A DNA stretch of 64,000 nucleotides from NCBI GenBank assembly GCA_977016875.1, contig CDRNST010000214.1:2790001-2854000 (forward strand). Reading direction: 5' to 3'. This document shows positions 20,865 through 42,700 of this stretch, in pieces (positions within the stretch are counted from its first letter, which is position 1; each line of letters opens with the position of its first letter). The stretch is from Pavona decussata (Eukaryota). The notes beneath the pieces are model-generated. The model did not search any database, was not told the origin of the DNA, and saw only the letters and a list, made by a program, of their open reading frames with translations. Position numbers and translations under genes: made by a program.

Positions 20865-21797
20865 TTACACCGCGGTTTCTTCATCCTCTTCATCCCGTGC
20901 TACTGCACCCGCAGGGTTTCGTATCAGCGGTTTGCGCGGGAGTGTAGGCGTTGCACCCGGACTCTGTTCGTCTTCTGAATCTGTAACATACACATCCAGC
21001 AACTCCTTGAGAGGCCTCATGGCATGGGCATGGGGATGGTCAGCCTGGTCTCCAGGGATGTACTTGTTGGACCGCTCTCCATTGGTGTCCTCAATATAGA
21101 TGCGCTCTACCTGGGATTTTCTCTTCTTTTTCCGTCGGCAAAACACGATTAATATGAGGAGAAGAAACCAAAGAAACACGAATGATGAAACGCTGATGAC
21201 GATGATTTCTGTTGGAGTTAGATCCTCCTCTTTCGTTTCTTCTGTCTCGGTGGGGCATGTAAAAGCGTCGTAAGTCCCGAACAGCTTACACTCCGAGATG
21301 TTGAGCACTTTATGGCAGTAGAAGCCGAACAAACTTACCGAGAGCTTGTAGTGTGCAATGCTCCCAGAATCGGCCACATCGGCAAGGCAAGACTCGTAGT
21401 AAAACAGAGCTTGAGACACCAGGGCCTTACTGCAATGCTCTTGGAGCACTCCTTCGTAGAACTGTTTATAACACAACGTCAAAGCTAGCTCTTCAAGAGT
21501 CGTGTTTCTAAACGCCAGGCTGTAGTTTGCTAAGGGTGTCATGTGGACACCTGACGGGGCCCATCCTGGGGACTCACCGGAATGGACCAGGAACTGCACA
21601 GTGGTGACATTAACGGATGGGGGGTTCTGAAGGGCACTTGTTGTGTCAACCGGAAGGAGGGTGTAAAAGCGACCCACAGTTGTCAGTCCCATTCCTTCGT
21701 CAAGGGGCACACTTAGCACCAGTCCTTCACGGTAATCATCGAACTTTACGGTCATCGAGGCGTTGAGTTGTTCCAAGTTCTTGGCATACTGCCACAC
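20865..21797 (-). CDS. Giant gene terminal exon: C8-like domain, TM helix, cytoplasmic tail
   Basis: VWQYAK... continues the LDEFK LamG motif of the previous exon; IIVISVSSFVFLWFLLLILIVFC TM followed by RRKKKRK; ends EEDEETAV*. Confidence 0.92.
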   Translation of the reverse strand: MWQYAKNLEQLNASMTVKFDDYREGLVLSVPLDEGMGLTTVGRFYTLLPVDTTSALQNPPSVNVTTVQFLVHSGESPGWAPSGVHMTPLANYSLAFRNTTLEELALTLCYKQFYEGVLQEHCSKALVSQALFYYESCLADVADSGSIAHYKLSVSLFGFYCHKVLNISECKLFGTYDAFTCPTETEETKEEDLTPTEIIVISVSSFVFLWFLLLILIVFCRRKKKRKSQVERIYIEDTNGERSNKYIPGDQADHPHAHAMRPLKELLDVYVTDSEDEQSPGATPTLPRKPLIRNPAGAVARDEEDEETAV

Positions 21798-24700
21798 CTG
21801 TTGGAAATAAAGACAATTGGATTTTTTATGATATGCGCTTTCGAGAAATAGTCCTACAGAATATAGCTGTGCCTGAGAAATTGTGTTCATTCTTCTAATC
21901 GAACAAAATTATCTCCCTTCTTGGTCGCCAGAGGTACCAAATCGAGTTGCGTGGAAACACATTGTAAAGGAACGACCTGTAAGAAAAGGGTCAGGGGGGG
22001 GAGGGGGGAAGGGAAGTGTGTGGAATCAACGTTACTTCAGTTTGGGGCGACTTAACTTAAGTTTAGGGGTACCGCGATGGTGCGACTTAGCAAGTGATAC
22101 ACATGCCTGCATTCCATGGTTCGACGGTGGGTTTCTTAACAATGATAGTTACATGGTAGCAGTTCTGAACTTTACTTTATTTTTGTGTTGGCTCGGAGAT
22201 GATCAGTTAATAAGTGTCTGGTTTGCTAATCTTTCATAAAATTGTTGTTACCTTAAATTCGTCCAGGGCACCACGCATGTCGTACTTGCTGTCCATCATA
22301 TATTCTCGAATGTACCGTCCGAGAATCAGCAACCCGTCGAAAAAGAACTGCTTTCCTATCTTTACACCAAACGTCGTTGATTGTCGATGCTCGCCTTGTG
22401 CGTACGCAAACGCTTGCAGTCGGCCATCGATTCTTCTCCATGTCACTGCTAAATGGGTCCATACACCTTCGTGGATGTTAATACCAGTTACAAGTTTATT
22501 CTCATCCCAGTCAACTTGTATTCCATCTTTGCAAATGATAGCGAAGTTCCCACCACTTGTCGCAGCAGAGAAGATGGCGTGCATCCCGACGATCCGTTCT
22601 GTAGAGTGTTTCTGGCTCGACGAGCAAAGATGGGCAACACTCGATCCCTTGTTGACTAAGCATACCCATATTTCAATGGTAAACTCGTCGAGAACGGGTA
22701 AGCTCGAGTTACCACCGTACATGACAGCTGTGTTACTGGAAGAAAATTCCAACATGTAACCTGCGCCAGAAAAGCTACGCCAGGCGTTCTTTGTCGTTAA
22801 GAAACTGTCCTTTTCTCTTATTTGAAATTGGGTGCCGAGTTTAAGGTCAAGTGACTCTTGACTTAGTACACGCTGGTCTCTTGTTTCACTTGAAGCGTTT
22901 GCAGCTGGTTGTTGAGTGGGATCGATTAAATGCATCGCAAGGCTTCTGTCGTTGTACTCCTTTATCCACTTGCTCTCTTTCGCTCCACAAACGCCATCTG
23001 TATCGTTTCTCATTGATTGTGGCATTTGGATTGCAGTTCCAAGAGTACCATTGTAGGTGAGGACGTTCAGCTGAACTCCTTCGTACTCTAGGAAAGCTAC
23101 CTCTAGAATGGTACTTTTGACCCAACGGTACTTGATGTCAGCAACCTCTACCCATTCATCAGTCTTTTCAAGCTTAGAAGATTTGTTAGTCGCAAAGGTA
23201 ACTGTTCCACTTTCGAGTGTCTCGAGATCACTATAACGAACAAAGAGCATCACTTGAGAGGTACGTAGTGCGACTTCACTGATTCGTCGGCAGCTCATTC
23301 TGTTATTGCAAGGAACTATCAACACTTGTGCCACGACTGCAGATGAGTTGATGAGCTGGAAAGCACCGGGCGCTTCGAAGTGGAAGTTCACGCCCGTCAC
23401 ACTGGTAAAATGAGGATCGCCAAAGGTAAGGGCCATTTGGGTCTCAGAGGAGTCGACTACAGAGGATTCGTCTGCGATTGCGCAGTCTGTCCCCATCCAG
23501 CCATCCGTGCACCTACTGCAAGGTAATGCCGCGTTATCTTCATCAGATAGATTAGTAATATTACCTCTCCAGTGTGGCTCGCACTCACATGTACCATTAG
23601 TTACACTACACACACCATGCCCGTTACATGTTCCCCTCAGTCCACCCGGGCAAAGTTTTGAACAATCCTCACCCCAGTAGCCTGGTTGACACTTACAGGA
23701 GACACCATCTGTTGCGTTGACATCGGTGATGGCATAACCAAAGACGCATCGTGTCGTGCATCGCGAACCAATCCAGTATGGAAATCGCTGAAGCACAAAG
23801 TGATGACACAGTTCCTTTGCTGGCCACTCAGTTAGATCTACAGTGCTCTGGCAATAGTCGGCAAAAGTAACCACGGCGTAAACGGCAGAGTGTAAATTCA
23901 GTGACACTGAAATGTCGTGAAGGCAGACTTTGTAGTAAAACTGGGCCACCTGCAGAGTGAGTGCCTGGCATCTGGCGTACAAGGTTCCACTCAGAACAAG
24001 ACTGAAACAGAACGACTCTGCGTCTAGTTGCAGCCTTTCATTAACAAACGTAGTGGCCTTTAGTTTCAAGCGAGGAATGTCAGCATCGGAGAACGACCAA
24101 CGCGGTTCATGAAATTTGATTGTGAACAGGTCATTTTTCCCTTGTAAATCACGAATGACTCTTCCCTCGGCCTGGTTGAACTTCCAAAGGTGAAGCAAAT
24201 CTGGGTAAGTGTCAACTTGCACATTCAACCGCCAGTTGACTTTCACAAGGTCCGGATTCGTCCGTCTTTTCCATATGCGCATTTCGTCGATCTCGCCAAC
24301 AAAGGTCGATTCAGGAAGCAGATTGTCTGAGCCAGGTGAAGGCTGCCATTGCCCTAGCACCAAGACCCCCCCGTTTCCGAAAACACGGCTGTCAAGCTTG
24401 AATACGCGAACTCTGACTTCTCCGGTAGAGGTAAAAAAGTAGAAGTGAAGGATTCCAACCAGCCGTTTATAGACCAAGGTGATTTGATTCCACTGATCGA
24501 TCTCGAGTGTGAAACCAGTGTCATAAACAGATCCGTTGTAGATGATTGTCAATGTCACATTATCAACCACAGCAAAAATGCTCTGGCTTAAGTAGGAAAT
24601 GATGACCCCTCCCGATTTGTGCGCCTTTATGAGCAGTTCAACTGTTAGGATATCGAAGGTAGGAAAATTTATGGGCCCTGATCGAACTGAGTGATCCACG

Positions 24701-27700
24701 AAGAACAAGTTGAATCCGCCACCAGTGGGAACGCGGTGTTCTAGGTAGTGCAAGAACTTATACATGAATAAAGTCTGAGAGCCGTTAACTATTGAACTGG
24801 TCTTCAAAGCAGTGATGTATGACTCAAGACTGTTAGATTCGTTAAACGAATGATCTTTGCACGCCCCGAGAAGGCCTGTGGAGTCCTGGCAGAAGATAGC
24901 TGGCATATGAACCGTCACAGAAATGCTATGTCCAATAGTTAGCACAAATTTAATTCCTGTTGGACCGAAGATGTGAAAGGTGACCGTGGAAATGCGTACC
25001 ATGACAAAATGCACCGATAGCTGGGTTCTGTGATCAACTAGAACCACTTTTCCATTTAACCAAACAAGAGGAAAGATGGGAACCGTCGTTGAAAGCGTTG
25101 TGATCGGTGCACGGATGACAACATGGGTGTTATGGTAACCGAACGAGAATCCTGTGGTGCAAAGTGTGGTGTAAGTACCATCCGTTACACATGGAGTTTG
25201 TCGAAGCTGGATGACGAAGTTACGCTGAATGGATCGAAGAAGGTAGAATTCGCCAACTACTCTGTAAGTGAAACTCACACCGAAGAAAGTTGTGAAGTAG
25301 CCAAAACCACCAATCGATGCAACCACGATATTGGTTGATGATATGCCGGTAACAAGCTTAACAGCAAATTGACAGTTTGTTCCATTCCATCCAGGACTAC
25401 AACTGCTGCAGTTTCCATCACCTGCCCAATTGGCTTCACATTTGCATTCTCCTGTGGTTCTGTCACACACTCCGTGTCCTCCACATGTGTTCAAAAGACC
25501 GCCTAGACATAACTGGGAACAATCAGTGCCCCAGTATCCCTTGGTACAGACACAAAGGTTATGGTCACTGGGATCTGCCGCACCAAAGACGCATTTCACG
25601 TGACATTTGTCTCCTATCCATACAGGAAAGTGAACTCCAGGAAACTTGTTGCAAAGCGACTGAGCTGGCCACGTGGTGAGGTTCAGGCCAGCTTGGCAGT
25701 GGTCAGAGAACGTAATTACAGCTGTCAGGGCTGCACTGATATAACCAGTTGTTGCTATGTCTTTTAGGCAAACAAGGTAATGGAATTCGAGCTCAGCCTT
25801 CAAGCCACCATAGCAGAGGTCATAAAGTTGACTCTTGTAGAAGAGTTCGAAGCAGAATGACTTTGCGTTCTTTTCCAGTGTCTTATTGGGAAAATATATT
25901 TCAAATGGTTTGTCAGTGGATGTAAAATTTGCCTTCACGTCCGCATCAGAAAATATCCATGAAGGTTGTTCCCACGGTGATCTCGGCAGGTAGATGTGCT
26001 CGTCGGTTGCGAGATTTTTGATGACATCACTCTCGCCTTCGTTGATCTTCCAGAGTCCTGTGACGTCAGGATGCGTTGGGAGAACATTCATGCCCCAGTT
26101 TTGCTGTATGAGAGCTGGATTGAATGCTCGTTTCCACACACGGAATTCATCAATGATACCCACAAATGATGTTACTGTAAAGTTTTCGTTCTCTCCGGGC
26201 GAGAGCTCCCACTGGCCAAGAGAGAGGATACCACCAGGTAGGAACGGATTGGAGGATAACACATAGGACCTGCGCTGTACCTTACCCAAAAAGTCAAAGT
26301 GATAGAACTCCAGCACCAGAGTCTTGTGATGCCACACAAGCGATATGTGACTCCACTTCTTAATTGTGACCGGAACACTAGTATTTATGATGGTTTTTCC
26401 AAAATGGATAGTGATAGAGTTCTCAATCATTATTGCGAATGACTGTAGGACTGCGTACGAGAAAACCGTTCCACCTAATCCGTACGGTTTGACGAGGATT
26501 TCAATTGTGATATCTACGTTATTAATAAATGTTTTCGTGAGCGGCTTGGACGAGGCTCCTGTGTGGTTGAAGAGGAGGGCATAAATTCCTCCAGCTGGCA
26601 ATCGCCTCTCTTGGAAGTGTTGGTACTTCAAGATGATTAAGCTTTCTATCTCAAGCACAAGAGCGTGGATTCCAACCCCTGCATTCAAGACTGACTGAGA
26701 GACGTTTCCAGGAATGACACTTGTGTTGGAACTAACCGTAAGATCATTGTTGGGATCGCTGTCGCAAGAACCAAGCAGCCCCGTCGAGTTTTGGCAATAC
26801 GCTGGCTTCACATCCACCTTAAAACTCAAGTACCGTCCGTCGATGCGAATGTGTATGGCAAAATTGTCTTGCCAACTGATTTGATAGTGATTGTGTCCTG
26901 TGTACTTCAGATGAACGCCAAGTTTAATGTCTCCAAGACTGGTGATAAGTCCCGACAGAAGTATAAGCTTTCCGTTGACCCAGATAACTGGAGCTCCACC
27001 AGTGATGTAGGGGGCGTGGAATGAGATCACAGCAGAAAAAACTCGTATTCCTATCGCGTTAACACAAACGGACTGTAATCTGCAAGGCACGTGACGAACT
27101 TGGACTTGGAATGACAAGGAAGGCACATGTATAAGGTAATATTCGCCGACAGCCACAAGAGTGAAGCTGTAGCCATCAAAGGTAACGTAATGGCCTCCAA
27201 TAGATGATATCGCGATTGATACGTGTAACTTGCTAAGCGTAACAAGGGCAAGGGAGCAATCGGACCCAGTCCATCCCGAGGAGCACCTGCCACAGTCCAC
27301 TGTTCCGTTGTAATTAGCGTGACACTCGCAGTTGCCTGTCACGCTATCACACACTCCGTTGTTGTTACACGGTCTGTCCGCTCCGCCAGGGCAAGGGCTT
27401 GCGCACTCCGGACCCCAGTAACCACGGTAACATACGCATGTCTCAGAGTCAATCTTCTTACCGAACACGCATTTTTGATCGCAGTCTTTTCCGAACCAGA
27501 TAGGGAAATCCCTGCTAGGGAATTCATTGCAAAGTGGTTTGGCTGGCCACACAGTAAGATTGTTGATAGCCTGGCAATAGTCAGCGTACGCTATTATCAC
27601 TTCCATGGACATGTACAAGGAGTTGAAACTTGCAATTCTTCGCAGGCAGGATCTGAAGTAAAACGTAGCCACGCCTGGGCCCAAGCTGTTACATTTTGAA

Positions 27701-30700
27701 TACAGTGCCCCCATTAATAGTGTCCTATTGCAGAATAGTTCAGCTTCTACTTGGAACGTTTTGTTCTTAAAAGGGAAAGTTTGTTCTCGATCAAAAAATG
27801 GCATTTGCAACACCACGTCTGAATATCTCCATTCAGGCTCCTTCCATGGTTTGAAAGGAAGTTCCAGCCTCATTCCTGTCACTTTATCAACCGCGACGAT
27901 TCCTTCACCTTCGTTAAACTTCCATGCGTGCGCGATGTCTGGAGTGTCTACACTCACCGACCTGTTCCAGGTCTGAAGGATGAACGCTGGGTGAAAATAG
28001 CGCGTCCATATGCGAAGTTCATCTATAAAACCAGCAAAGAACTCAACAGGCTGAATTCCGGATCCATCTAGGGATGGCATCCAACCAGCCAAGGCGATAA
28101 TTCCTCCGGGAACAAAAACATCCACGCCAATGTTAATGTCGAGGCGATGTAACTGTCCACCAGATGCGAAGTAATAGAATTGTAACACCGTGGTCGATTT
28201 TCTGAACACGAGACTTAGCTGGTTCCATTCGTTAAGCTCCGCAGCGATATTTGTTGGGTAAACGTTGTCTCCGTAGTATATAGTGAACTTTCCTCCCTCG
28301 TTAGTGACAAAGAATGTCTTGCTTGTGGTATAAGAAAGGATGACGCCGTAACGGATTGTTTTGAACATGATTTTAATAGTTATGTCCGTGGACACGAACG
28401 CCTTGTAGATTACTCCAGAAACGACTGTTGTGTGTTCAAAGTAAAGCGCATAGCCAGCGTTTGCGTCTCGATATTCAACGACGTCTTTATACTTGTACTC
28501 GAATAAACTATGGCAAGCCTTCACTTTGAGTTTTGTGATAATAAGCGATGTTATAAGTTCTTGGGTTTTGTTCTTCCTACTGGATGCATTTTGCCCCAAG
28601 GAGGATGCAGAATCGTCTGCTAGGCGGAAACTATCTGGTTGGTTTGTTACGTTGAACGTAAAGCTTCCTTCAGAGCAGTTTGTATTCGGATGGTAAGACA
28701 CCAGTAATTCTAGCAAACCCTGGTTGCAAGAACCAAGTAGACCGATCGCTGATTTGCACACTGATCCTGCTGCGTTTGTGCTTAGGCTCAAGTACCGTCC
28801 CGTGACTCGTATTTTCAGGCGCAGTCCTGTGTATTTCACTTCCCACAAATATGCTGTGATTTTGGTGACTTCGAACCCGTAGGTTTGCAGAGTTATTTGA
28901 TGCACGTCAATATCAATGACTTTCCCGTTTAACCAAACTACCAGATTTCCACCAGACGTGTACGGTCCGTGCAAGACAACATTGTGCGAAGATATTTTCA
29001 GCGCAATGGAATTAATGCAGGTTAACTGTTGGAAGCACGACACCAGTCGAATCTGCACGACCACGGAAACATGTATGGAGTATATGAGGTAATATTCACC
29101 GGTGACGTGTAAGCTGTAGCTGATGCCACTTAGCGATGTAAAGTGCCCTCCAAGGGACACTGTGCCTACGCCTACTAAGACACTGCCAGGTGGCCATCGG
29201 GTGACTGCCGTTGAACAGTCCGTTCCAGCCCAACCAGTTGAACAGGTTGTGCAGTTTTCATTTCCTTGCCAGTTTAGCTCGCAGAGGCATTTTCCTGTCA
29301 CAACATCGCAGACTCCGTGGTTGTTACAAGCGCGTCCTTTCCCTCCAGGACAAATGCCCGAGCAGTTTTCTCCATAGAAACCTGGATCGCATACACAAAC
29401 ATCACTGTTGTTTGAGGCTTTGCCAAAAATGCACGGGATTGTACAGTTGGTTCCTATCCAGTTGGGGAAACGCTTTCCGGGGAACTTGTTACATAGCGAC
29501 TGAGCTGGCCAGTACGGCAAACCAAGAGTTTTCTGACAATAATCTGATATTGTTATCACGGCATCGATCGACTGAATTGTTATTCCAGTGTCCACTACCG
29601 CTTGTACGCAGGCGCGGAAGTAAAATTCTATTGTTACGTTGCCCAGCGATTGGCACGCAGCATGAATTGGCCCTTTAAATATGAACTCGAAACACACCTC
29701 TGTAGCGATGCCCTGCAAAGTCGCGTTGTTTTCGTTCGGATTCACTGCGACCACGGATGCGATGGGTGCATCAGAGAACACCCACTTCGGCTTTCCTAAA
29801 GGATATTTCGGGAATGACAACGTAACACCAGAAACAAGGTCTCTTACTATGGTATTTTCGCCTTCGTTGAATTTCCACAAATTCAAAAGTGACTGGGCAT
29901 TAGGTTGAACATTTGCTCTCCAACTTTGTTGAATCAGTGAATAGTCAAAAGGTATGCTCCATACACATATCTCATCTATTTGTCCGTAGAATACGTTAGT
30001 TGGCTGAACGCTGATAGAACCAGAGGCAGGTTGCCACATGCCGATGGCAAATGTCCCTTCAGCAAGGAAAGGGTCCACGCTCACACTGAACTTTCGTATC
30101 TGCACAAGCCCCGAGGAGAACGTAACAAAAACAAACAGTTCCAGCTTTGCACGAACGAATACAACAGAGATTTGATTCCACACATTAGCTTCAGTGGCAA
30201 TTCCGGTATCGTAGACATCTAACCCAATGACAACTTTAACTGTTACGTGGTTACTGATGTAAACTGTCACATTGGACGTGTACGAGATCAAAGTACCTCC
30301 ACAAACCTGAGGATCACATGATTTCACCAGCAGCTGGAAGGTTACTGTTTCACTCACAAAAAGGCGAACTAGGCCCTGTGTCACTACTGCCGTAAATCGA
30401 TAATAGAGACTGTAGATACCACCGTAAATAACCCTAGTCTCCTTGCGAACCTCTTCGTCGATGACAATAACTGATCGGGTTTCTTTTCTCACGGAGAGTT
30501 TTTCTTTGACAAATCTATTCACGTCACCACTAGATTCGGTTGCTCCTCCAACCCCTTCTAAAACTGTCGTTGGCCGGTTTCCAGAGAACACAGAACTGTC
30601 ATTTCCTTGGGTATCGTTTTGCCCCAGCTTAACTTCAGCACAAGAACCGCAAAGGCCATCAGCAATTTGGCAGAAGCTCAAAGATACCGTGGATTCCACA

Positions 30701-33700
30701 GTCAAGTATCGATCCGTGAAGACTGTTCGTATGGACAAATAGTTTGAAATAACTATCCTGTAAGCAGTGTTTGATATTGGCTGAATGCTCACATTGTTTG
30801 CCAGCATGTCTTTAGTGGGCTCTCCGCCAGCACTGATGTCTTCATTGTTGGCGTACACAAGTGGTTCTGAGTTACTCTCGTATGGGGCATGTACGCTGAC
30901 GGACAATCCATTGAACTTCACACCAATCGCATTTATACAAACGGAGCTAATCTCGCATGGTACTTGTCGAACTTGTGCTTGAAGGATGGAAGAATTAATC
31001 ATCATAAACTCTCCTACTGTTGTAAATGTGAAGAGTGCGCCATCAAAGCCAGTGACGTAGCCTCTCTCTGAAATGGTACATATTTTGAACGTATTGTTTG
31101 CAACGGATGGATCTCTTGTTGACATGGCGACAGAGCAGGAAGGACCTCTCCAACCCGGAGTGCATGTAGAGCAGTTTTGGTCTCCTTGCCAGTTGGGATG
31201 ACATCTGCATTTGCCGGTTGCAATATCACACTGGCCATTGCCGAAGCAAGGGTTATATGCACCTCCAGGGCACACATTGGAACAATTTACGCCCCAGTAT
31301 CCGCCATCGCACCTGCAAGCTCCATCAGAGTACCATCCGATTAGGCACTTCGTTGTACAGTTTATTCCAACCCAATCATCAAAGCGCCCTTGGGGTAGCA
31401 CATTGCAAAGATCTTTTCCAGGTAAAGTTGAGAGATTAAGGGCAGCTTGGCATTCTTCTCCGAAAGCAGTTGCTGTTGTTAAAGCTGAGTCGAGACTTCC
31501 CGAGGAAGACACTTCTTCGATACAAGCTTCGTAATAGAAATCAGATCCTCCCGTCGCGTTGGAACATTCGTCATAGAGAGGACCTTTGAGGAAAATCTCT
31601 GAACATAGCTTTTCAGTTGAATTGTCGACGACATCCTCAGAAGGCTCTGGTACTTCGAAGGCAGACGTTTCTATAAGTGCATCTGAAGGATACCAAACTG
31701 GACCTCTAAAGGGAGGGGCTGCAAGATTGAAGTCAAATGATCCTACGGTCGCACGGCAAACGAAGCCACGTCCTTCGTTGAACTTCCACAGAAGGGAAAT
31801 TCCTGGTGTGTTTATCTGCAAGTTGGTATTCCAGATTTCCTGAATCATAACAGAGTCAAATCGCTTGTTCCAAAAGCTTACTTCGTCCACCCAACCCACA
31901 AAGCCGGGTACCGAGAGAGAAACTGTGGTAATCTGCCAGAGAGCGATGGATAATGTACCACCCTCAGGAAATATCCCAACGCCAACATAAAAGACGCGTG
32001 TTTGAATGACGCCTATGGAATTGATCAAATAGATCTGTACGAGACCTGAAGTGCGCTTGTACACGAACGAGATGTGATTCCAAAGTTCAGTTTCTAGCAC
32101 GAGTTTGGTGTCAATGACAATGGGACCAAAGTAAATCCGGATCGTTCCATTCACTGTTATTGCAAATGTCTTATTGAGGGCGTATGAGATAATAGTTCCT
32201 CCGTAGAGTTTTGGGTCCTTTGCCTTGACAAAGAGCTGAACCGTGATGTAGTTACCGCTGAAGACATTGATTATGGGTGCCGACACGACTGACGTACCAT
32301 TGAAGAAAAGACAGCTTCCTCCTCCGTTAACGGATGGTGATTCACCAGAGATGTTTAAAATGGGACCAAAAGAGCTTTCATTACGCGGGATAGTCCACTT
32401 GTTCACGTAGGAAACCAGTATATCTTGAGTTACAGTTGTAATGTCAGCATAAGTATCTAAGATTCCCCCTCCAGTAGGGCAGTTTGAGGGGGCCACGCTT
32501 AATCCAGGATCTCTGCATCTTCCGAGCAGGCCGCAAGCTTCTCGACACAGCCATCTGTCCATAGTGATGGAGACATCAAAGTGTATTGCGAGGGAGTTTA
32601 TAACAAAATGGAAGCCTCCTGGACCCGTTACGGTATAACTGTTAAGTGACATCCGTTGAAACACAAACCCTGAAACTCCCAACGAAATAAGAGTTTTGTA
32701 ATTTATAGGAAAACCATTCATTGTAATCAACACTTGACCCACGATTCCGATGCTACTGTGAACTGCGATAACATTTTCCCTTACACGTACAATTGCACAT
32801 CTTAAACGCACATATCTACCGATTCTCACTTGGCGGAACTGGATACTGAGTCCATAGCGAGACAGGGCCAGCACGTTGAATTCGCCTGCTACGTTTACAT
32901 TGATTTTAACTCCGTCCAAAGTCACATAATAACCAGTTCCAAAGACCGATGTTATCGGGAGCTCTTCTGTTGGTGATGTTATAGCAACTGAACAATCTTT
33001 GCTTACGTATCCAGGGGTGCACTTACTGCAGTCAAGTGCTCCTCGCCATTTTCTTTTACATCTGCATGTTCCCATACCACTTAAGCAACGTCCATGCCCA
33101 CTGCAGACATTCACGGGCCCACCAGGGCAGGCTCCGTCACACCGCGGTCCCCAGAAACCTCGGTCACACTTGCATCTTCCGTACAGTCCTCGAATTTGGT
33201 ATCCAAAGGTACATGGAATGTCACAGCTCACGCCAATCCAGTTAATGAGTCTTGAACTTTGGAAGACTTCATACCTATTCACACAAAGGAGTATAAAATT
33301 ACTACAGACCACCATTTCCACGTTCAATCACAGGCACGCCCGTGTTCGTAAGGAATGTTCCGAATCTACCAGGATTTCTTTCAAATTGTGAACCGGATGA
33401 ATGACTCAGATAACTTCGATGTTTACTTTTACCCAGTGGATAGATTTCATAACCATTTTCCCCTTATCCCTCAGCCCCACCCCTTTGGAACGCACGACGA
33501 CGTTTCCTGAATATGCAAGCAATATGGTATTTCAGTAAAATTCGAACGTCCGGAAATGGAAGGCTACAAACTGGTACGGATTTTCTTATTTTTATAAAGG
33601 TACTCTATTACAAACATACTCAGATGTATACTCAATTCATGAAAGTTGTACATACAATTTCCTGTGTATTTTAATCTTTGGCGAATTACTTAAGGCGCCA

Positions 33701-36700
33701 TCAAATGCAAATTAATTTTGCAAACTTGAGCGGGCCAGTAGTGAGCGAAAGCAACAATGGTTGGAGCAATAGTTGCAAAACATGTTGGTAAACTATTGGC
33801 AAGACTCAATCTATCCGCGCCATGTTTTTCAACTACAGTTTTAAATGTTCACACACTCAAACTTGGCGTGTTAATGTTTGTCAGATATGCGTTGTTTACT
33901 GTTATTGCCAAATTATTCTATGCTATTAATAGTAGCCTGGTCCTTAATGCACATTTGGCATGTGAAAACACGAATTCCCTAATGTTTTGGAGTTTGTTAA
34001 CTTTTAAAATTGTGGTGGGAGCGCGTTTAAAAAATACCATTACTATGAAAAAAGCAAAATACCTGCACATCTGTCTCGCCGGCCAAATAGCCAAATTTAG
34101 TTGTAATTGGCACGTGTCTGCAAAGGCTACAACAACGCTGACTCCCAGTGACACCTGGCGACTTGACGCAATCACCCTTAAACACGCCCTAACATAGAAA
34201 GATATCGTTCCCCCGCCCAGAGCTCCACAAGCGTAACTTGGGGACGACGTTTTGATGTGTTCATCGCACCAAGTTTCTGCTTTGACTCTGAGTTCAGTCG
34301 TATGGAAGGTGATTTCAGTGGTTACGGGAAGAACCTTGATATTAGCGTAACTGAAGATCCACCGGGGTGCTCTGCGTACGGATGGTATGTACAAATGAAC
34401 GCCACTGACCAAATCGTGCACAACGTTACTCTGTCCTTCATTGAACTTCCACAAAATAGCGATGTGGCGTGCGGTGGAAATCACGTTTATTCTCCAACTA
34501 GTCTTAACATCATGTAAACTGAATTCACGATTCCAGAAGCGAACTTCATCGATCAATCCAAAGAAACCCGGCAAACGATCGCCTTCCTCGGTGATGGTTT
34601 CCAGAGCTGGAATCCATTGCCCTATTGAGATGGTACTGCCTCCTTTTTTAAATACTCCAGGAATCATAGTGCGGGTAGCTTGACGAACAACACCAATGGA
34701 ATTAATGTGGTAGAAATAGATTGCGCCGGTGATGTTATGGTACACGAGGGTGACTTGGTTCCAGGTGTCGATCTCAGGAGTAAGCCCAGTGTCCCAGATC
34801 TCCAACCCAATTCGCACTTTTAAGGTCACCTCAATAAACACCGTCAATGTTATGGCTTTGCTGTAAGTGAAAAGGACCCCTCCAGGATTTGACCTAGAAA
34901 TCACGTTAAACAACATTTCAGTTGTGATAACAGGGGCATTTAACACATCAGGCATAAGATCCGTAGACACGCCAACTCGCTTGAACTTTAAGGCGTATTC
35001 GGCGCCAGTTACGACTCTTTCTTCTTTGTAAATTCCATAGTTGTACACGAAAAGGCTATCAGCAATGGAAACTCGCCACGTTTCCTCCAAAGACCCACCA
35101 GCAGTCACATTGAAGTCGTTCTCTCTGTTTCCGTCGCAATTTCCGCACAATGCGTTTGTCCCATCACACAAGGACTGATTAGTATGACCAGCGATCACCA
35201 GCCCTCTTCCTACTACACGCAGTTGGAATTTGAGATCTTTACTCAGGCTACTTAGTACATAAGTAGTTGAGGACGTCTGCTCCAGCGACATTTCACTGGA
35301 AATGTAGATCTTTGTTGAACTGAATTCTGCTATGCTTCCATTCACCCAAACAACAGGCCGGTCGGTTTCTTCATAAGGGGCGTGGAACGTGAGCTTCCAT
35401 CCAGAAATGAAAGAGAATGCTATTGCGTTTATACAACGTGTTTCGCCATTGTGACACGGCACTTGCCTGAACTGTCCATTAAAGCGTGCACTTCTCACAA
35501 ACCAAAACTCCCCAACTCCAAAGAAATTGAAGTGAGCACTGTCAAAGTTGGTGAAATGTCCTCCGAGGAAAGCGGAGCACGTTGGTAACTGTGTTGTCGC
35601 AACAGCTACAGAGCAATCAGATCCGGTCCAACCAGGAGTGCAGTTACTACAGTCGCCATTTCCTCGCCAGTTAAGATCACATTCACACATTCCGCTGTTG
35701 ACGTCACAATTGCCATGGTCGTTACAAGGGGAGTTTCCGCCTCCTGGACACTCACTGGCGCAGTCTTTGCCCCAGTATCCTCGTGTGCAAACACACAAGC
35801 TCGCGTTACGTGCGTCGGGATTTCCGAATATACACTTGAAGGAACAGTCAGTACCGATCCATTGCCGAGGAAGTCGTTTAGGAAATTGTTGACACAGAAG
35901 TTGAGCAGGCCAAGAGGGAAGGTGAAGCACAGTCTGACAGAAGTCTGCATAAGCTGACAATACAATATAAGCGGTGTCTAAGGAACCAGAGGAATGGATG
36001 TCAGCAAGACATGCCTGATAGTAAAACTGAGGAACAGTCGTGGCTAGTTGCTGTCCGCATAGAGTTTGCAGTCTTGTGTCGTAGATAAGTTCGAAGCACA
36101 GCTTGCTGGCAAGCGACCCGAAAGTGGCATTTCTATATTGGACTACCGCACTTGTGACTACCGTTGGAAACACATCTCGGATATAAGAAAAGTGCCACAC
36201 AGGTCGACTGCTGATCACTTGAGGCAGGTAGATATTTGATGAGCTAGCTATACGATTAATCACCTCTCTGCCAACCCCCTCGTCAAACTGCCACAGGGCA
36301 CTTAAAGTTGGTTGGTTGCCTGTGACAACAATAACGAAACTCTGACGGATGAGCACAGTGTCCAGAACAAAAGTCCAGATTCGCAGTTCATCTATGCTTC
36401 CAAAGAATGGCTGCAATGGTACACCTGTGATGTGCTGCTGTGTTATGTGCCAGCGACCAAGCCAAAGAGTACCACCAGAGGTGAAGAGGTTAGGTCCGAT
36501 GTAGATCTGTTTGGTGGAGAGATCGCCTTGTGAATCGAGCTGATAGTAGGCTAGGACTCCTGAAATAAAAAGGTAGACATCGTTGTAAGGTTTGTTGCTT
36601 TGGCCTGCGTGTAAAAATTGCAGCTTTCGTTTATCTGTAGTTTTTTGAAAATGCAAGTAAAATAAACAAAAACAAAAAAATGATAAACGTTCAAAGTAAC

Positions 36701-39700
36701 AACTACTGGCAAAAAAATGTTATATCCCCAATACTTAAGTCTAGTACTACAGTGTAAATGTACACTTTATAATGTGCAACTAATACTCAAACAAACTTCT
36801 AAATAATGTTAACAGATCTGTCTCCGTGGATTGGCACTAGCCGAGGACTGCATTTGGCTACGGCAGGTTTAACTGTCCAACCTTTCAGTGGGTATCGCAG
36901 TTTCTTCTTCCGCCGTTGGCTACTAGGAAGAATTGCCTCTCCTCTTGTATTATAGTGGAGCTACGTTCTAAGGTTCGAACACTGCGATCCTCTCCATCAA
37001 TTGAACTGATTTCATAAACAACAGCGCAAATAATTTAATCATGCATTGAAGGGTTTTCATTGGTAACAAATTTACAGGAGAAAAATGTTTGTTGACTCCC
37101 CTAAACAAATTCGCCAGTTGTAAGTCCCAGTGTGTTTGCCTTAATGCTATCGTCATTTGGCATTCCCCAACTATCAGTTTGGACAATCGTGATTTCACTA
37201 AAGAGAAGTGAAAATTCAAACTGTCGGACCTAACAAAGGAACAAGTACAAACAAGACACGTAACAAATTCAAGCCAGCTTCACTTACCTGTAGCCGAACT
37301 GTATGCAATGGACACTTGTACCCAGGTTGCCAAAGGAAGTGTAATTCCTACGTCATACACAGTTCTGCCCACGTGTACTTTAACCTTGACATCATTCACA
37401 ACGGCGAAGGTAAATTCTTTGGCATAACATAAGATCGTACCTCCATAAGCATGGACTCTGACAAACAGCTGAAGTGTAAAGTCTTTTCCTTTGGTGAAAG
37501 AGGTGTGTAGTGTACCACTGGATGCCACTGTACCATTAAACTTCAATGCATATCCATTCGAGGTTATTTCTCTTCGCTCTTTGTAGCTGGTGTAGTCGAA
37601 TAAAAACAGTGAGTCAATGACGGAAACTTTCCATTGGGAGCTGAAGATGTCGATGATTACCCGTTGTGAAATACTCTGCCCCCAGAACACTGTACCCGTG
37701 CTGTTTGTAAAATCGTTTTCGATGTTTGAATCACAGGAGGAACAAAGGCCCGAAGCTACGGTGCAGAATTGAGAAACAGAAGTCATCTCGAATGATAAAT
37801 ACTTTTGCGAGGCTTCCACTCTAAGTGTTATCGTTCCAGCCGCTTTATTTACAATTTCATACCCCTGTGGAGATGTTTTGTGAAACCTAAAGTCATTTTC
37901 CAAGTCAAAAGTGGTGGTGTCCGTTAGCCTACTGTTCAACCACACCAATGCTTTTCCACTACCATCGAAAGAGGCTCTTATCACCAGACTCGTGGAACCG
38001 GTTTTTACTGCCAACGACGAAATACAAAACGAACCACTAATGCAAGGGATTTGACGGATCTGCGCGGTGAAGTGATTGCTCTTTAGTAGGTAGAATTCTC
38101 CGTAAGTTCCAAAGGTGTATCCAACGCCATCAAATGTTGTGTAATGTGCTGCACCAAAACCTTGACAAGTAAAGTTGTCTGGGCGGCTTCTATTTCCTCC
38201 GAGTGCGAGAGAACAATCAGCTCCAACCCATCCTGGACTGCACAAGCTGCAATCGCTGGTGACATTTGACGGAACTGGGCAGTTACATTTTCCAGTGATG
38301 TTATTACATGACGCTTGGCCGCTACAAGGTGAATAGTATCCGCCAGGACATTCTTGCGTGCAGTTACCACCGAAAAACCCTTTCATGCAGACGCAACTGT
38401 CACGTTCTGGAAGGCCAAATCTACAGAGTTTCGCACAGCTCTGCCCGTACCATTGTGGGAAGTTAACAGCAGATACATTGTCACATAGGCTCTGAGCATA
38501 CCACGACGATTGTTGGTGGAACAATTGATAGAAATCCGAAACAGCCATTACTGACCAATATGCATAACTATCATGATTGCCTCGCGTTACAGATGCCACA
38601 CACGACATGTGATAGAGCCAGAGAGTTTCGGTGTTTAGCATGGTGTACTGTGCTCTTAACGAAGAGTGGAAGATAAGGTCGTAGCATTTCAGCTCTACAT
38701 TCATCCAGTTGCTGCCAAATCTGAAGCTGTACGCTTTAACAACATCAAATGAAAATTGCTGAATTTGAGCCGTCGAGAACAACCATGTTGGTCCATGCCA
38801 AACGCCCGATTGGAATGTTATGTGGGCGCTCGAAACGCAGTCATACGCCACTGTACCGTAGCCTTCATTGAACTTCCAAAGACTCGCAAGATTTTGAACT
38901 CGTGTGGTGCAGTCCAAGTTTCTTTTCCAGTTGGCCGAAATCGATAACGGGTCTAGCTTTTGGTTCCATATTCGCAGCTCGTCAATTTGTCCAATGAATC
39001 CTTCTTTGAGTGGTATTCCTAGTCCAGAAGGAGGGGGCAAGCAATAGCCTAGGGCCAAGATCCCTCCAGGTTGAAACACGTTCACACTACTCGTGATTGG
39101 AAAGTTCCGACTGTGAGCACGACCAGCGTCGTCTATGTGGTAGAATTGAAGGATGCGCGTTGATTTAGACCAAACGAGAGCAATTTGATTCCATTTGTGT
39201 ATTTCAATTACAGCCAAGGTGTCCAGAATGACGTCTTCGTACCGTAGTTTTATCTTCCCAGATTCCAAAACTATGGCAAACATCTTTGTGGTCGTGTACG
39301 AGATGAGAGTACCGTTTTGGCTCTCTGCACGAACCATAAATTCGATAGTGATGTCTGAAGCGGAGAAACTGAAGATGTCCCCAGTTTGGGCGCCAGCGTT
39401 GTTGAAATACAGAGCGTAGCCTCCACCGTAAAGATCTCTATGCTCATGGTAGATATTGATGTCATAGAGGAACAAACTGTCTCTAGCCCACACAAGCCAG
39501 GATGGACCATAGAATTTATGCAAGTACGACTGCGTGACATTTTGCGCTGTAACTACTTCACCATTTCTGTTGGTTAAATCGTCAAATGGGTTGACATTGC
39601 AGCTACCCCAGAGCCCCTGAGTGGTCTGACAATACGTTTGGTTGTCAACACGCAAATGAATATCGAGGTATCGGTTGTACAACCGAACAATAAGCTGAAC

Positions 39701-42700
39701 ACCATAAGTCGAGGAGAGAACGAACTGCAGGCGCGAGGTGCGTTTAAACGTAAACTTGTGATTTGCTGGTCCAAAGTTAAATTCGAGAGAATATTTTATT
39801 TTACCGTTGACATAGATAACAGGTTCGTCTTGGGTTGCAAACCTTGCATGAACTAGTAGAGTATGTTGTTCGACTCTCACTGCTACAGCGTTGAAGCATG
39901 AACTTGATGAAAAGCATGTCACCATGCGAGCTTGGACTTCAAAGGACGAGGACAGTATCAAGTGATATTCACCATTTCCCAAAAACCTGTATCCAGTTCC
40001 GTCGAGCGTAACAACGTAGCCATGCCCAAATGCCGCTGCAGTACGGTTATTTGGACTTTGAACGATGACAGAGCAATCAGCACCGTGCCAACCTGGTGAG
40101 CATGTAGTACAGTTCACGTCGCCTCGCCAGTTAGGATCACATAAGCACAAACCTGTAGTCTTGTTGCAGAGGCCGTTGTTAGAACATGGCGCTGATGGCC
40201 CACCCGGACAGTCATGCTGACATGCTAAGCCCCAGTGTCCATCGCGGCATGAGCATGTGTAGGATTCGCTTGACACCTGGAGTGGGAAGACAGGTATATT
40301 AACTATTGGGGACCTCAGTGCATACCATATTTATCCCACAACATATAACTATACGGATGAACAGAAATTTCAAGAGCTGGTGTTTATGCTCTGAATTTTT
40401 AATCTATTCCACGGCCATCGCAATCACGTTTGTAGGCCCTCGTCACTGCAGTGTTTCATAGCATAGGTATGACAAAGTGGACTGGTGACCTGGGCTTGAG
40501 ATTTTCCAGTCTTCTACGGAATCTTCGGACTTTTTTAACACTTTTCGGAAAAAAAAGGAAAAAAAAAAAAACAAGACCAGAAACGTTAAAAGAAAAACCA
40601 TGCTGGTCTGCAGCCTCATATGCACTTAATCTTAAATTCGACAATACCTAACGGAACCTAACGAGTTTGATTGTGATTTCATAATCACTTTAATACAGCG
40701 ATTTTCACTTGACCTTGAAATGACTCCGTGCGAACAAAAAACTGTGCGTTTAACTTTCCTTTTGGTTTGTTTCCATCTCGATCTCGATATTCCTCTTGGA
40801 CGTTACTCAGTTTTGGCAATCCTGTGATCTGTCTTGATCAATCTAACAATCTGTTTTATATTAGAGTGTTCTTTAGAGAGAAAACGTACGCATGCAGTTT
40901 TAATTCGATTTGTTCATTTTACCTATCTTGTGGCGGATGAAACAAAACGCGAACAGTCACGGAATTTGCCAGAAACCATTTTTCAAGGTCAAACGAAAAT
41001 CGCGCTGTTAATTGTTGGTTCCTGCTTTCAACTTTAGAGTGGTTTTCAGACGTTAGCTTTGTTGAACAAAGTAACTACTCTGGCTGATCATATTAGTCGT
41101 AAATAACACAATGAACCAGTCAAGATATGAAGTGAAACACGACACGGAAAAATGCGTGCGAGCAAGTCCCGATAGATTTTGGTTGTACTTATCAGGAGCA
41201 AATATTTTGAAAAGTATAATGAAGCTAACTCAAAGCAAATGCAAATAAGATATGGCTAAAGGCAATTTAGGCAAGGTTAACCTCGTGACAATGCAGCACT
41301 GGTCAGTGGTAGATTCCCTTGAAAACATGCGATGTTTGGGGTGGCCCTTGGGGTTTTCAGAGGCTGATCAAGTATCGTGTTTTGCTGACCAGCAAGTCAC
41401 GTTGCTGGTCTTTGCGGTTCATGCAAGCCAGTTTGAGATCTTTAATCTCCACATTCGATTGACAATCGCTCTCTGAAATAAAACAGTTCCAACACTAACA
41501 CCAAGATACTCCCACTTACATTGTTAGCCGGAGCTGAGCTGTCCGTGCATCTCATAGAGTGAATCAGTGATGAGTCCACCACCGCTGCCTTTCTCTCATT
41601 GGATACTGGAAAAGCTAGAACCCAGGCTATCGGGTTGGAGTCTTGCAGTCTGTAAGAACAAAGAAAGAAAAGGTAGCTACAGTCTTAAAGGTGAAATTAT
41701 ATTAAAAACTTTATCTTATTACAAAGTAAACGAGGACAACACTTTTTTTTTTTTTTTGCTCGCAATTATTTCAACTATATGGTGTGCAATTACTTTAGTG
41801 ATAAAGTTGGAGATTGCTGTTCATTTATTGTACCATTAGGTTGTTTAATTTACAGAAAAGCACGCACGTATACAAAGGTTTGTGAAAACGGGTAAAGTCA
41901 AAGTTCAAGACGCATTTGTATACCATCTTTGATTACCGATGGATAATTAAAGTAGATTACAAACGTGTTTCCAAAGTTTTAGTTCTCATATAAATGGAAC
42001 ATTAGGAATTTATCTTCTGCTCTCATCATCTTATTGGCTTTTAAAAAAAGTGTAGGTGAAAACTTGGAAATTAGCTAAATTGAATTATTCTCGCACCTCA
42101 CTCTGAAAACCTTGTCGTGCCTCCCAGGAACAAACTTGCTCGGTTGCCCATAATTTTCAGTTGCTAATGGTATTAGGTTACTAGTTCCATTTTCCGATCC
42201 GCTTAATTTACGAACAAATCCAGCCAGTCCACCAGGAACGATCTCTAGATAAGGTCTGGCGAAGAAATTGTCTGGTCCCACTTCTAGGTACACGTTGTGA
42301 GGATTTTTGTTGTTGTATCCAAACCAGGCGAACACCGCGCCTTGATCAGTGCTGTTTATGCAGTTGACGATTGGTTCAATTGGTATTTTTCCCCCCTCCC
42401 CGTCAAGTTCATCACGGTATTGAGCATGCGCAGTGACACAGTCAATGTCACATCTCTCTCCTACGTGCGCGCCGTCGCAGGAAGTACAGGTTGGTAATCC
42501 CCAACCGAACACACAACGGTCGCAGGCTGATCCATTCCAGTAACCTAAGTTGGAGTCATAGTGACACGTGCAGATATCTTTGTTTTGCCCTGTTGCGTCG
42601 CCATGGACACAATAAACGTTGCAACCGACTGGCCAGCCGATGTAGTTTGTAATGCATTTATCACATTCAGATCCTGTAAACTGCGGTAAACACCGTTCGC

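What the first reader, a model, noticed from the sequence alone, without database searches (positions are those of the whole stretch)
21300..40276. Nine-fold cassette with a LamG/pentraxin domain inserted between VWD and C8
Canonical D assemblies are VWD-C8-TIL-E. Here each ~630-aa unit is EGF/laminin-EGF pair, VWD (GLCGxCD..ND-type motif), LamG-like jelly-roll (W.x.I.LV, GG.L.LG.W, F.G.IDE.R.W, W.FNEG.G), then a helical C8-like Cys motif (C..L...FY...C..D...Y.D.CQ), with no TIL. A lectin-like domain periodically looped out of a VWD-C8 scaffold would give a multivalent array of nine divergent binding heads.
Basis: partly seen in the sequence, partly recalled or inferred. Interest (0 to 1): 0.7.

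Follow-up and report, generated by a model that had tools for sequence, protein, structure and literature searches.

The report
Nine LamG-bearing D-like assemblies, coral protein
This stretch encodes nine tandem ~630-residue units of a giant, transcribed coral membrane protein. Each unit is a von Willebrand/mucin-type "D assembly" with a laminin-G jelly-roll inserted between its VWD and a degenerate C8-like helical module, and this design recurs in uncharacterised proteins of several invertebrate phyla.

Summary
On the minus strand, 40255 to about 21290, lie nine in-frame cassettes of 619-653 aa. Each has an EGF pair, a VWD, a Laminin_G_3 domain and a five-Cys helical module. A transmembrane helix and a cytoplasmic tail follow.

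Transcript contigs from four studies splice out two GT-AG introns exactly and keep the frame.

The helical module fails Pfam C8 (17 bits or less, cut-off 23.7). Four other results place it with C8:
- A profile comparison with this genome's own C8 domains gives 80% probability (E 1.3e-5; shuffled controls 6% or less).
- An exhaustive fold search of 48,161 PDB chains returns only VWF, mucin and FCGBP D assemblies as its top 13 hits.
- The whole-cassette AlphaFold model superposes on VWD-C8-TIL of mucins and VWF (Z 21-25, 270-317 residues) while skipping the LamG.
- A few relatives have VWD followed directly by the helical module.

No TIL is present. A teneurin-type EGF pair sits in its place.

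The cassette is not unique to this coral. It repeats in hemichordate, echinoderm, mollusc and annelid proteins, all unnamed. Precomputed Pfam hits call the helical module "Vwde" (PF26129).

That the LamG domains bind ligands is untested, and they are not the most divergent part of the unit. I rate this a new variant of a known kind, of moderate interest.

The parts
38471..40255 (-). Cassette 1: EGF pair 40052-40255, VWD 39554-40066, LamG 38750-39472, helical module 38471-38728. This helical module has lost two of the five conserved Cys.
35880..38395 (-). Cassette 2: EGF pair 38192-38395, VWD 37688-38194, LamG split by an intron (37288-37606 and 36162-36559), helical module 35880-36140. This helical module gives the best sub-threshold Pfam C8 hit (E 0.0066).
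36560..37287 (-). Intron (GTAAGT...TTTCAG, phase 1) inside the LamG of cassette 2.
   Evidence: A joint is seen in transcript contigs of 4 runs from 4 studies.
34063..35795 (-). Cassette 3: EGF pair 35592-35795, VWD 35091-35606, LamG 34326-35051, helical module 34063-34310.
33275..34062 (-). Intron (GTATTT...GAATAG, phase 2) in the linker between the helical module of cassette 3 and the EGF pair of cassette 4.
31393..33174 (-). Cassette 4: EGF pair 32971-33174, VWD 32458-32979, LamG 31660-32370, helical module 31393-31647 (Pfam C8 E 0.046).
29479..31317 (-). Cassette 5: EGF pair 31114-31317, VWD 30571-31107, LamG 29749-30468, helical module 29479-29736.
27517..29397 (-). Cassette 6: EGF pair 29194-29397, VWD 28648-29193, LamG 27793-28503, helical module 27517-27774.
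25639..27438 (-). Cassette 7, the unit that was modelled: EGF pair 27235-27438, VWD 26716-27240, LamG 25921-26637, helical module 25639-25896.
23794..25554 (-). Cassette 8: EGF pair 25351-25554, VWD 24811-25344, LamG 24064-24768, helical module 23794-24051.
21288..23697 (-). Cassette 9, next to the membrane: EGF pair 23461-23697 (with an 11-aa insert), VWD 22915-23460 carrying the only GDPH (23410-23421), LamG 22252-22806 continued after a predicted intron (21798-22251) from 21797, helical module 21288-21515.
20865..21206 (-). Transmembrane helix (21141-21206), basic stop-transfer sequence CRRKKKRK, an acidic cytoplasmic tail of about 90 aa, and the stop codon at 20865-20867.
   Evidence: The only Pfam hits are weak ones to TM and juxtamembrane families.

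Best explanation
The region encodes the membrane-proximal ectodomain of one giant type I membrane protein of a stony coral. It consists of nine tandem modified D assemblies. In each, a VWD beta-sandwich packs against a three-helix, five-Cys module derived from C8 (Pfam 'Vwde'). A teneurin-type EGF pair takes the place of TIL/E. A Laminin_G_3 jelly-roll of about 235 residues is inserted in the VWD-to-C8 connection, so it projects from the VWD/C8/EGF core.

Shown here: the domain identities, their order, the nine-fold repetition, transcription and splicing, the C8-like fold and profile similarity, and conservation of the cassette across phyla.

Inferred: the cores stack into a beaded stalk that displays nine LamG domains as ligand-binding sites for glycans or matrix. 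Only the last assembly, which alone keeps GDPH, autocleaves like MUC2, FCGBP, MUC4 or RGM. That cleavage would allow shedding or covalent anchoring of the ectodomain at the cell surface.
For: - Nine units in frame.
- Pfam VWD, Laminin_G_3 and EGF_Teneurin above cut-off, and no TIL.
- Spliced transcript contigs in 4 runs from 4 studies, with GT-AG joints that keep the frame.
- AlphaFold model of cassette 7 plus the next EGF pair: pLDDT 82.7, pTM 0.75.
- VIA-align places that model on MUC5AC, VWF, MUC5B, MUC2 and FCGBP D assemblies at Z 21-25 with 270-317 aligned residues over model residues 69 to about 650. That is about 110-150 residues more than a VWD alone, and the LamG is skipped.
- The helical module modelled alone (pLDDT 84) has only D-assembly proteins as its top 13 of 48,161 chains: Z 6.5-9.0, rmsd 2.0-3.4 A (2.0-2.4 for most) over 78-101 residues. 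Foldseek's top 13 are also all VWF or MUC2.
- hhalign against 10 bona fide C8 domains of the same genome gives probability 80%, E 1.3e-5, with four Cys in register. Thirty column-shuffled controls and a reversed control reach 5.8% at most.
- Sub-threshold Pfam C8 hits occur in 2 of 9 modules.
- In 257 retrieved relatives, 548 of 556 internal helical modules follow a LamG. Six follow a VWD directly, with gaps of 97-141 aa.
- GDPH is kept almost only in the last VWD of homologues, 51 of 647 VWDs in all.
Against: - The module does not reach Pfam's C8 cut-off in any unit.
- A profile of it finds no VWF or mucin sequence in the PDB.
- Z 6.5-9 is within the range that small helical bundles can reach by chance, according to the tool's own note. 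The argument rests on all top hits being D assemblies, not on the size of Z.
- The packing of VWD against the helical module is a prediction from a 22-sequence alignment. I could not inspect coordinates, PAE or disulfide geometry.
- LamG ligand binding, stalk geometry and GDPH cleavage are all untested.
- LamG is less divergent between units than VWD, which does not favour nine different specificities.
Confidence: 0.75

Rival explanations
1. The helical module is an independent small helical domain (the Pfam 'Vwde' family) with no common origin with C8. On this view the cassettes are plain beads on a string (EGF, VWD, LamG, helical), and the resemblance to D assemblies comes from the VWD alone.
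For: No unit passes the Pfam C8 cut-off. The PDB profile search is blank. Pfam curators made a separate family. Only 4 or 5 of C8's 8 Cys are present. The Foldseek E-values for the isolated module are not significant, 0.15-1.5.
Against: hhalign gives 80% against 6% or less for shuffles, with Cys in register. The top 13 of 48,161 chains are all D assemblies. The whole-cassette alignment covers 270-317 residues, more than a VWD can supply. In some relatives the module follows VWD directly, exactly where C8 sits.
Confidence: 0.15
2. The nine-fold array is an annotation or assembly artefact, or a decaying pseudogene array, rather than one functional coding region.
For: ORFs A, B and C are separated by stops in the raw frame. 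Unit 1 has lost two conserved Cys.
Against: The breaks are GT-AG introns that are removed exactly in transcript contigs from four studies, with the frame kept. There are no stops inside 3,697 aa. A 58%-identical homologue has nine VWDs, eight of them in complete cassettes, and a hemichordate protein has nine cassettes. Homologues at 49-97% identity occur on many other contigs.
Confidence: 0.02
3. The cassette is simply the vertebrate VWDE architecture repeated. On this view VWD-LamG-Vwde-EGF is already present once in VWDE, so nothing here is architecturally new beyond the copy number.
For: The precomputed Pfam family that hits the helical module is named Vwde. NCBI names some coral genes 'VWDE-like'. 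The order of hits (VWD, Laminin_G_3, Vwde, EGF) matches the cassette.
Against: None of the 20 relatives I could look up by name is a VWDE; all are 'uncharacterized' or 'hypothetical' invertebrate proteins. The only functional VWDE paper found lists just VWD and EGF domains. I could not obtain a vertebrate VWDE sequence to test for a LamG.
Confidence: 0.4

Closest known systems
D assemblies (VWD-C8-TIL-E) of VWF, gel-forming mucins (MUC2, MUC5AC, MUC5B) and FCGBP
   Same: A VWD domain above the Pfam cut-off. A helical Cys module in the C8 position with a C8-like fold. The model superposes as one body on VWD-C8-TIL (Z 21-25). The assemblies are arranged in tandem, as in FCGBP. GDPH is present in one assembly.
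   Different: A LamG of about 235 aa is inserted between VWD and the C8-like module. The C8-like module keeps 5 Cys rather than 8 and fails the Pfam cut-off. A teneurin-type EGF pair replaces TIL/E. The VWD keeps only 4 conserved Cys. The protein is membrane-anchored.
[quoted passage not shown]
   Same: Homologues of this gene carry precomputed PF26129 hits at the position of the helical module, together with VWD and teneurin-type EGFs.
   Different: The one VWDE study I read describes VWD plus EGF-like domains. Here there are nine cassettes, a transmembrane anchor and a very large N-terminal extension. Whether VWDE has the LamG insertion could not be tested.
LamG/pentraxin-type jelly-rolls (PAPP-A N-terminal LamG, PTX3, CRP, SAP, BACOVA_03559)
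   Same: Pfam Laminin_G_3 and structural Z 18-20 over about 190 residues.
   Different: There are no conserved Cys, so the pentraxin disulfide and signature are absent. The domain is embedded inside another assembly rather than terminal or free-standing.
MUC4, SUSD2 and RGM, membrane-tethered proteins with a GDPH-cleaved VWD
   Same: A single membrane-proximal VWD with GDPH in a type I membrane protein.
   Different: Those proteins lack C8-like and LamG modules next to the VWD. Cleavage here is only inferred.

Membership tests
Pfam VWD (PF00094) | Score above the gathering cut-off (22.9 bits) | tested here: met
   130.4, 33.3 and 78.8 bits in ORFs C, B and A.
Pfam Laminin_G_3 (PF13385) | Score above the gathering cut-off (27.6 bits), and a jelly-roll fold | tested here: met
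   85.6, 30.9 and 30.9 bits. The model's LamG block matches PAPP-A LamG and pentraxins at Z 18-20.
Pfam C8 (PF08742) | Score above the gathering cut-off (23.7 bits) | tested here: not met
   The best scores are 17.2 bits (unit 2) and 14.5 bits (unit 4); the other units give nothing. Genuine C8 domains of the same genome score 47-75 bits.
Pfam C8 (PF08742) | Eight conserved cysteines | tested here: not met
   The module has five conserved Cys. Four align with C8 Cys, and the central C8 Cys cluster is absent.
C8 fold / D-assembly scaffold | A helical module with C8 topology that follows VWD and packs on it | tested here: met
   This was met on predicted models only. hhalign gives 80% against 6% or less for controls.
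Canonical D assembly (VWD-C8-TIL-E) | A TIL domain after C8 | tested here: not met
   There is no TIL hit at E 0.01 or better. Teneurin-type EGFs occupy that place.
Pfam Vwde (PF26129) | A hit of the family model on the helical module | not testable with these tools
   The family is missing from the local Pfam copy. It is known only from precomputed hits on homologues, in the order VWD, LamG, Vwde, EGF.
Vertebrate VWDE orthology | Reciprocal best match to VWDE, with the same domain order | not tested
   No vertebrate VWDE sequence could be obtained. The 20 relatives I looked up carry no VWDE name, and those that are named are invertebrate 'uncharacterized' or 'hypothetical' proteins.
Pentraxin (PF00354) | The pentraxin signature with its conserved Cys pair | tested here: not met
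   There are no conserved Cys in the LamG block. PF00354 does not hit the window ORFs at E 0.01 or better.
GDPH-autocleaving VWD | A GDPH motif at the start of the VWD | tested here: met
   The motif is present only in unit 9 (23410-23421). Units 1-8 have GHGY, GAAH, GTGY, GFGY and similar at that position. Cleavage itself was not tested.

The most novel reading that the evidence does not exclude
The LamG-inserted D assembly is an ancient, unrecognised class of extracellular module shared by cnidarians and bilaterians, and possibly the ancestor of the single cassette in vertebrate VWDE. In it, C8 shed half its disulfides, EGFs replaced TIL, and a lectin-like LamG was grafted into the VWD-C8 hinge. 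In corals, nine such units plus a self-cleaving GDPH unit would form a multivalent, sheddable or covalently anchoring adhesin, for example at the tissue-skeleton or tissue-mucus interface.
Probability: 0.25. Interest if true: 0.65.

Novelty: new variant of a known kind. Interest (0 to 1): 0.5.

Why it matters
D assemblies are the polymerisation and cargo-binding units of VWF and mucins, and are usually treated as a fixed VWD-C8-TIL-E block. This result shows a conserved lineage, present from cnidarians to hemichordates, echinoderms, molluscs and annelids, in which that block carries a whole LamG domain inserted at the VWD-C8 junction. The same lineage has a relaxed C8 and has swapped TIL for EGF.

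That gives a structural reading for the otherwise unexplained Pfam 'Vwde' domain. It also gives a testable hypothesis for VWDE, a gene required for limb regeneration in axolotl whose biochemistry is unknown. For coral biology, it annotates a large part of one of the biggest expressed cell-surface genes. 'VWDE-like' proteins have been reported in coral skeleton proteomes, although identity with this gene was not shown.

Tried and rejected
- ESM-Atlas feature searches gave no usable hit for the helical module, and only generic Laminin_G_3 and NELL clusters at 0.80 for the whole cassette.
- The Atlas fold search with the helical model gave TM 0.44 or less, with unrelated families.
- A profile hmmsearch of the helical module against PDB sequences returned only chance helical hits.
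- Three word-index protein searches found many cnidarian and one echinoderm homologue, but no named VWDE.
- Cluster look-ups returned no names for most relatives.
- PF26129 cannot be run locally.
- Paper searches for VWDE with LamG, pentraxin or concanavalin, and for PF26129, found nothing relevant.
- I rejected the pseudogene or artefact reading because of the spliced transcripts and the conserved homologues.
- I rejected a pentraxin identity for the LamG because it has no conserved Cys.
- Exons were never joined for any search or fold. Cassettes 2, 3 and 9 were analysed as separate exon pieces, and frame continuity was checked by arithmetic only.
Full report
**1. What is there**

The window comes from a stony-coral genome, according to the scan's own notes. 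The gene runs on the minus strand. ORF listing shows a 3,697-aa open exon (22237-33327) flanked by ORFs of 998, 912 and 341 aa. The EGF motif C.C..G[YFH][WFY]G..C recurs nine times, at 40255, 38395, 35795, 33174, 31317, 29397, 27438, 25554 and 23697. The LamG motifs WKFNEG and IDE.R.W keep the same period. The six units that lie within single ORFs are 619-653 aa long and align end to end, and the exon pieces of units 2, 3 and 9 fit the same alignment.

Pfam gives VWD, Laminin_G_3, EGF_Teneurin, EGF_TEN and EGF_2. It gives no TIL and no C8 above threshold. After unit 9 come a transmembrane helix (21141-21206), the basic stretch CRRKKKRK and an acidic tail.

Upstream, at 42078-50907, lie teneurin-type EGF arrays. 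I did not retest that.

**2. The gene is real and spliced**

Contigs of four runs from four studies lie on the exons and are absent from 33334-34001 and 36674-37174. They carry two joints with CT..AC ends on the plus strand. With the ends placed exactly, the introns are 36560-37287 (GTAAGT...TTTCAG) and 33275-34062 (GTATTT...GAATAG).

The runs are only guessed to be RNA. However, precise removal of GT-AG introns is what spliced transcripts show and what genomic DNA does not. Phase arithmetic shows that both junctions keep the frame: phase 1, then phase 2. A third intron, 21798-22251, is predicted from AAG|GTAACA ... CAACAG|GTG in phase 0. It restores the LamG motif LDEFK|VW, but no reads were laid on it.

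**3. Is the helical module a C8?**

By sequence threshold it is not. Scanned alone, two of the nine modules give C8 hits of 17.2 and 14.5 bits, against a cut-off of 23.7. The others give nothing. Ten genuine C8 domains elsewhere in this genome score 47-75 bits. A profile of 19 modules (alignment A2) finds no VWF or mucin chain among PDB sequences.

At greater depth the answer changes:
- hhalign of A2 against an alignment of the ten genuine coral C8 domains (A3) gives 80% probability, E 1.3e-5, over 57 columns. Four Cys and the FYY..C, Y/D.C and W(P/R)....C landmarks are in register. My re-run gave 76%. A reversed C8 alignment gave 4%, and 30 column-shuffled versions gave 5.8% at most.
- AlphaFold of the module alone (pLDDT 84.1, three helices) was compared with 48,161 representative PDB chains without any Foldseek pre-filter. 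The top 13 are all D-assembly proteins: MUC5B, VWF, MUC5AC, MUC2 and FCGBP. They score Z 6.5-9.0, with rmsd 2.0-2.4 A over 78-88 residues for most. For FCGBP D10 the aligned chain range is a stretch of C8 size (4264-4349).
- Foldseek's top 13 are likewise all VWF or MUC2, though with non-significant E-values of 0.15-1.5.

**4. Is the LamG 'looped out' of a VWD-C8 scaffold?**

I modelled cassette 7 plus the next EGF pair (708 aa) with a 22-row alignment of cassettes from this window and five related loci. The model has pLDDT 82.7 and pTM 0.75. It contains:
- EGFs at residues 1-68
- a VWD sandwich at 74-235
- LamG strands at 286-500
- helices at 519-598
- EGFs at 600-690

VIA-align puts the model on MUC5AC D2, VWF D2 and D3, MUC5B, MUC2 D1 and D3 and FCGBP at Z 21-25. 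The alignments cover 270-317 residues, span model residues 69 to about 650, and span chain ranges that cover VWD through TIL, for example MUC2 856-1182 and VWF 862-1195. A VWD is about 165 residues, so 110-150 further residues align across the 235-residue LamG, which is skipped. Those further residues are the helical module and part of the EGF region. The LamG itself matches BACOVA_03559, the PAPP-A LamG domain and pentraxins at Z 18-20.

I could not read coordinates or PAE, so the packing is a prediction and not an observation.

**5. Relatives**

An exhaustive HMMER search of 1.84 billion representatives with the helical-module profile finds only 154 proteins at E 0.001 or better. Those that carry a name are all 'uncharacterized' or 'hypothetical':
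- Ptychodera flava, a hemichordate: 6,778 aa
- Nucella lapillus, a gastropod
- Argonauta hians, a cephalopod
- Owenia fusiformis, an annelid
- Amphiura filiformis, a brittle star
- Actinostola and Desmophyllum among cnidarians

.

With block HMMs I tallied architectures in the 257 retrieved proteins. EGF-VWD-LamG-helical is the repeating unit throughout: nine times in Ptychodera, six in Amphiura, five complete units plus two that lack a detected helical module in Nucella, and eight complete cassettes among nine VWDs in a 58%-identical coral protein. Of 556 internal helical modules, 548 follow a LamG. Six follow a VWD after only 97-141 aa, which is too short a gap for a LamG. This LamG-less form places the module exactly where C8 sits. 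One relative (P0167) has a bona fide C8 (37 bits) and this module in the same chain.

The sample was collected with these same profiles, so the counts describe the family. They are not an unbiased census.

**6. Relation to VWDE**

Homologues carry precomputed hits to PF26129, which the gene tables name 'Vwde'. The hits fall in the order VWD, Laminin_G_3, Vwde, EGF. The family is absent from the local Pfam copy, so I could not place it on the window directly.

From memory only, this family was built on vertebrate VWDE. The one functional VWDE paper found lists VWD and EGF domains and no LamG. Corals have genes that NCBI labels 'VWDE-like', and one was found in a skeleton proteome. Identity with this locus was not tested. 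Whether vertebrate VWDE contains the LamG insertion remains open, and it is the main unknown for novelty.

**7. Function**

Shown: a transcribed, conserved, membrane-anchored array of nine modified D assemblies.

Inferred: the VWD/C8-like/EGF cores form a beaded stalk and the LamG domains are the ligand-binding parts.

The LamG block is better conserved between units (33.7% mean identity) than VWD (25.3%) or the helical module (30.1%). This argues for a shared role rather than nine different specificities.

Conserved Cys counts are 4 in VWD, 0 in LamG, 5 in the helical module and 13 in the linker plus EGF pair. These numbers suggest one disulfide between the helical module and the EGF region.

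Only unit 9 keeps GDPH (23410-23421). Among homologues, 51 of 647 VWDs have it, and it is nearly always the last one. I infer autocleavage next to the membrane, as in MUC2, FCGBP, MUC4 and RGM, but I did not test it.

**8. Verdict**

The structural interpretation is supported at the level of fold and profile. The idea of nine divergent binding heads, and uniqueness of the architecture, are not supported. I file this as a new variant of a known kind: a D assembly with an inserted LamG, a degenerate C8 and EGF in place of TIL. It belongs to a catalogued but undescribed metazoan family.

Noticed in passing
window 23410-23421, and homologues P0001-P0025: GDPH is kept only in the ninth, membrane-proximal VWD. 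In homologues 51 of 647 VWDs have it, and in nearly every protein it is the last VWD (for example the 9th of 9, 7th of 7 or 6th of 6).
   Followed up: partly
window 38471-38728 (helical module of cassette 1): Two of the five conserved Cys (alignment positions C50 and C89) are both replaced by Tyr, while the other three stay. Losing both together suggests they form one disulfide. Homologues of this exon also lack the precomputed PF26129 hit.
   Followed up: no
P0248/P0256, P0244, P0235/P0251, last unit of P0031: In these relatives the helical module follows VWD after only 97-141 aa, with no LamG. In P0248 that VWD has GDPH and is followed by an EGF and a TIG domain. This may be the un-inserted form of the cassette.
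   Followed up: partly
P0167: One metagenome-derived relative carries a bona fide Pfam C8 (37 bits) after its first VWD and the Vwde-type helical module further on in the same chain.
   Followed up: no
window 41600-42390 and the N-terminus of P0024: The cysteine-poor module just upstream of cassette 1 (DGEGG...AWFGYNNKNPHNVY...) also opens the brittle-star homologue, directly before its first cassette. It is therefore a conserved cap of the cassette array.
   Followed up: no
window 49351-50907: Inside the teneurin-type EGF array there is a Delta/Serrate-ligand (DSL, PF01414) hit of 29.2 bits, above its cut-off of 24.2.
   Followed up: no
window 33000-38000: Transcript contigs from different studies differ from the window at many single positions (for example 35046 C>A in all four runs, and 36117 C>T in all four). 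This is probably allelic or population variation.
   Followed up: no
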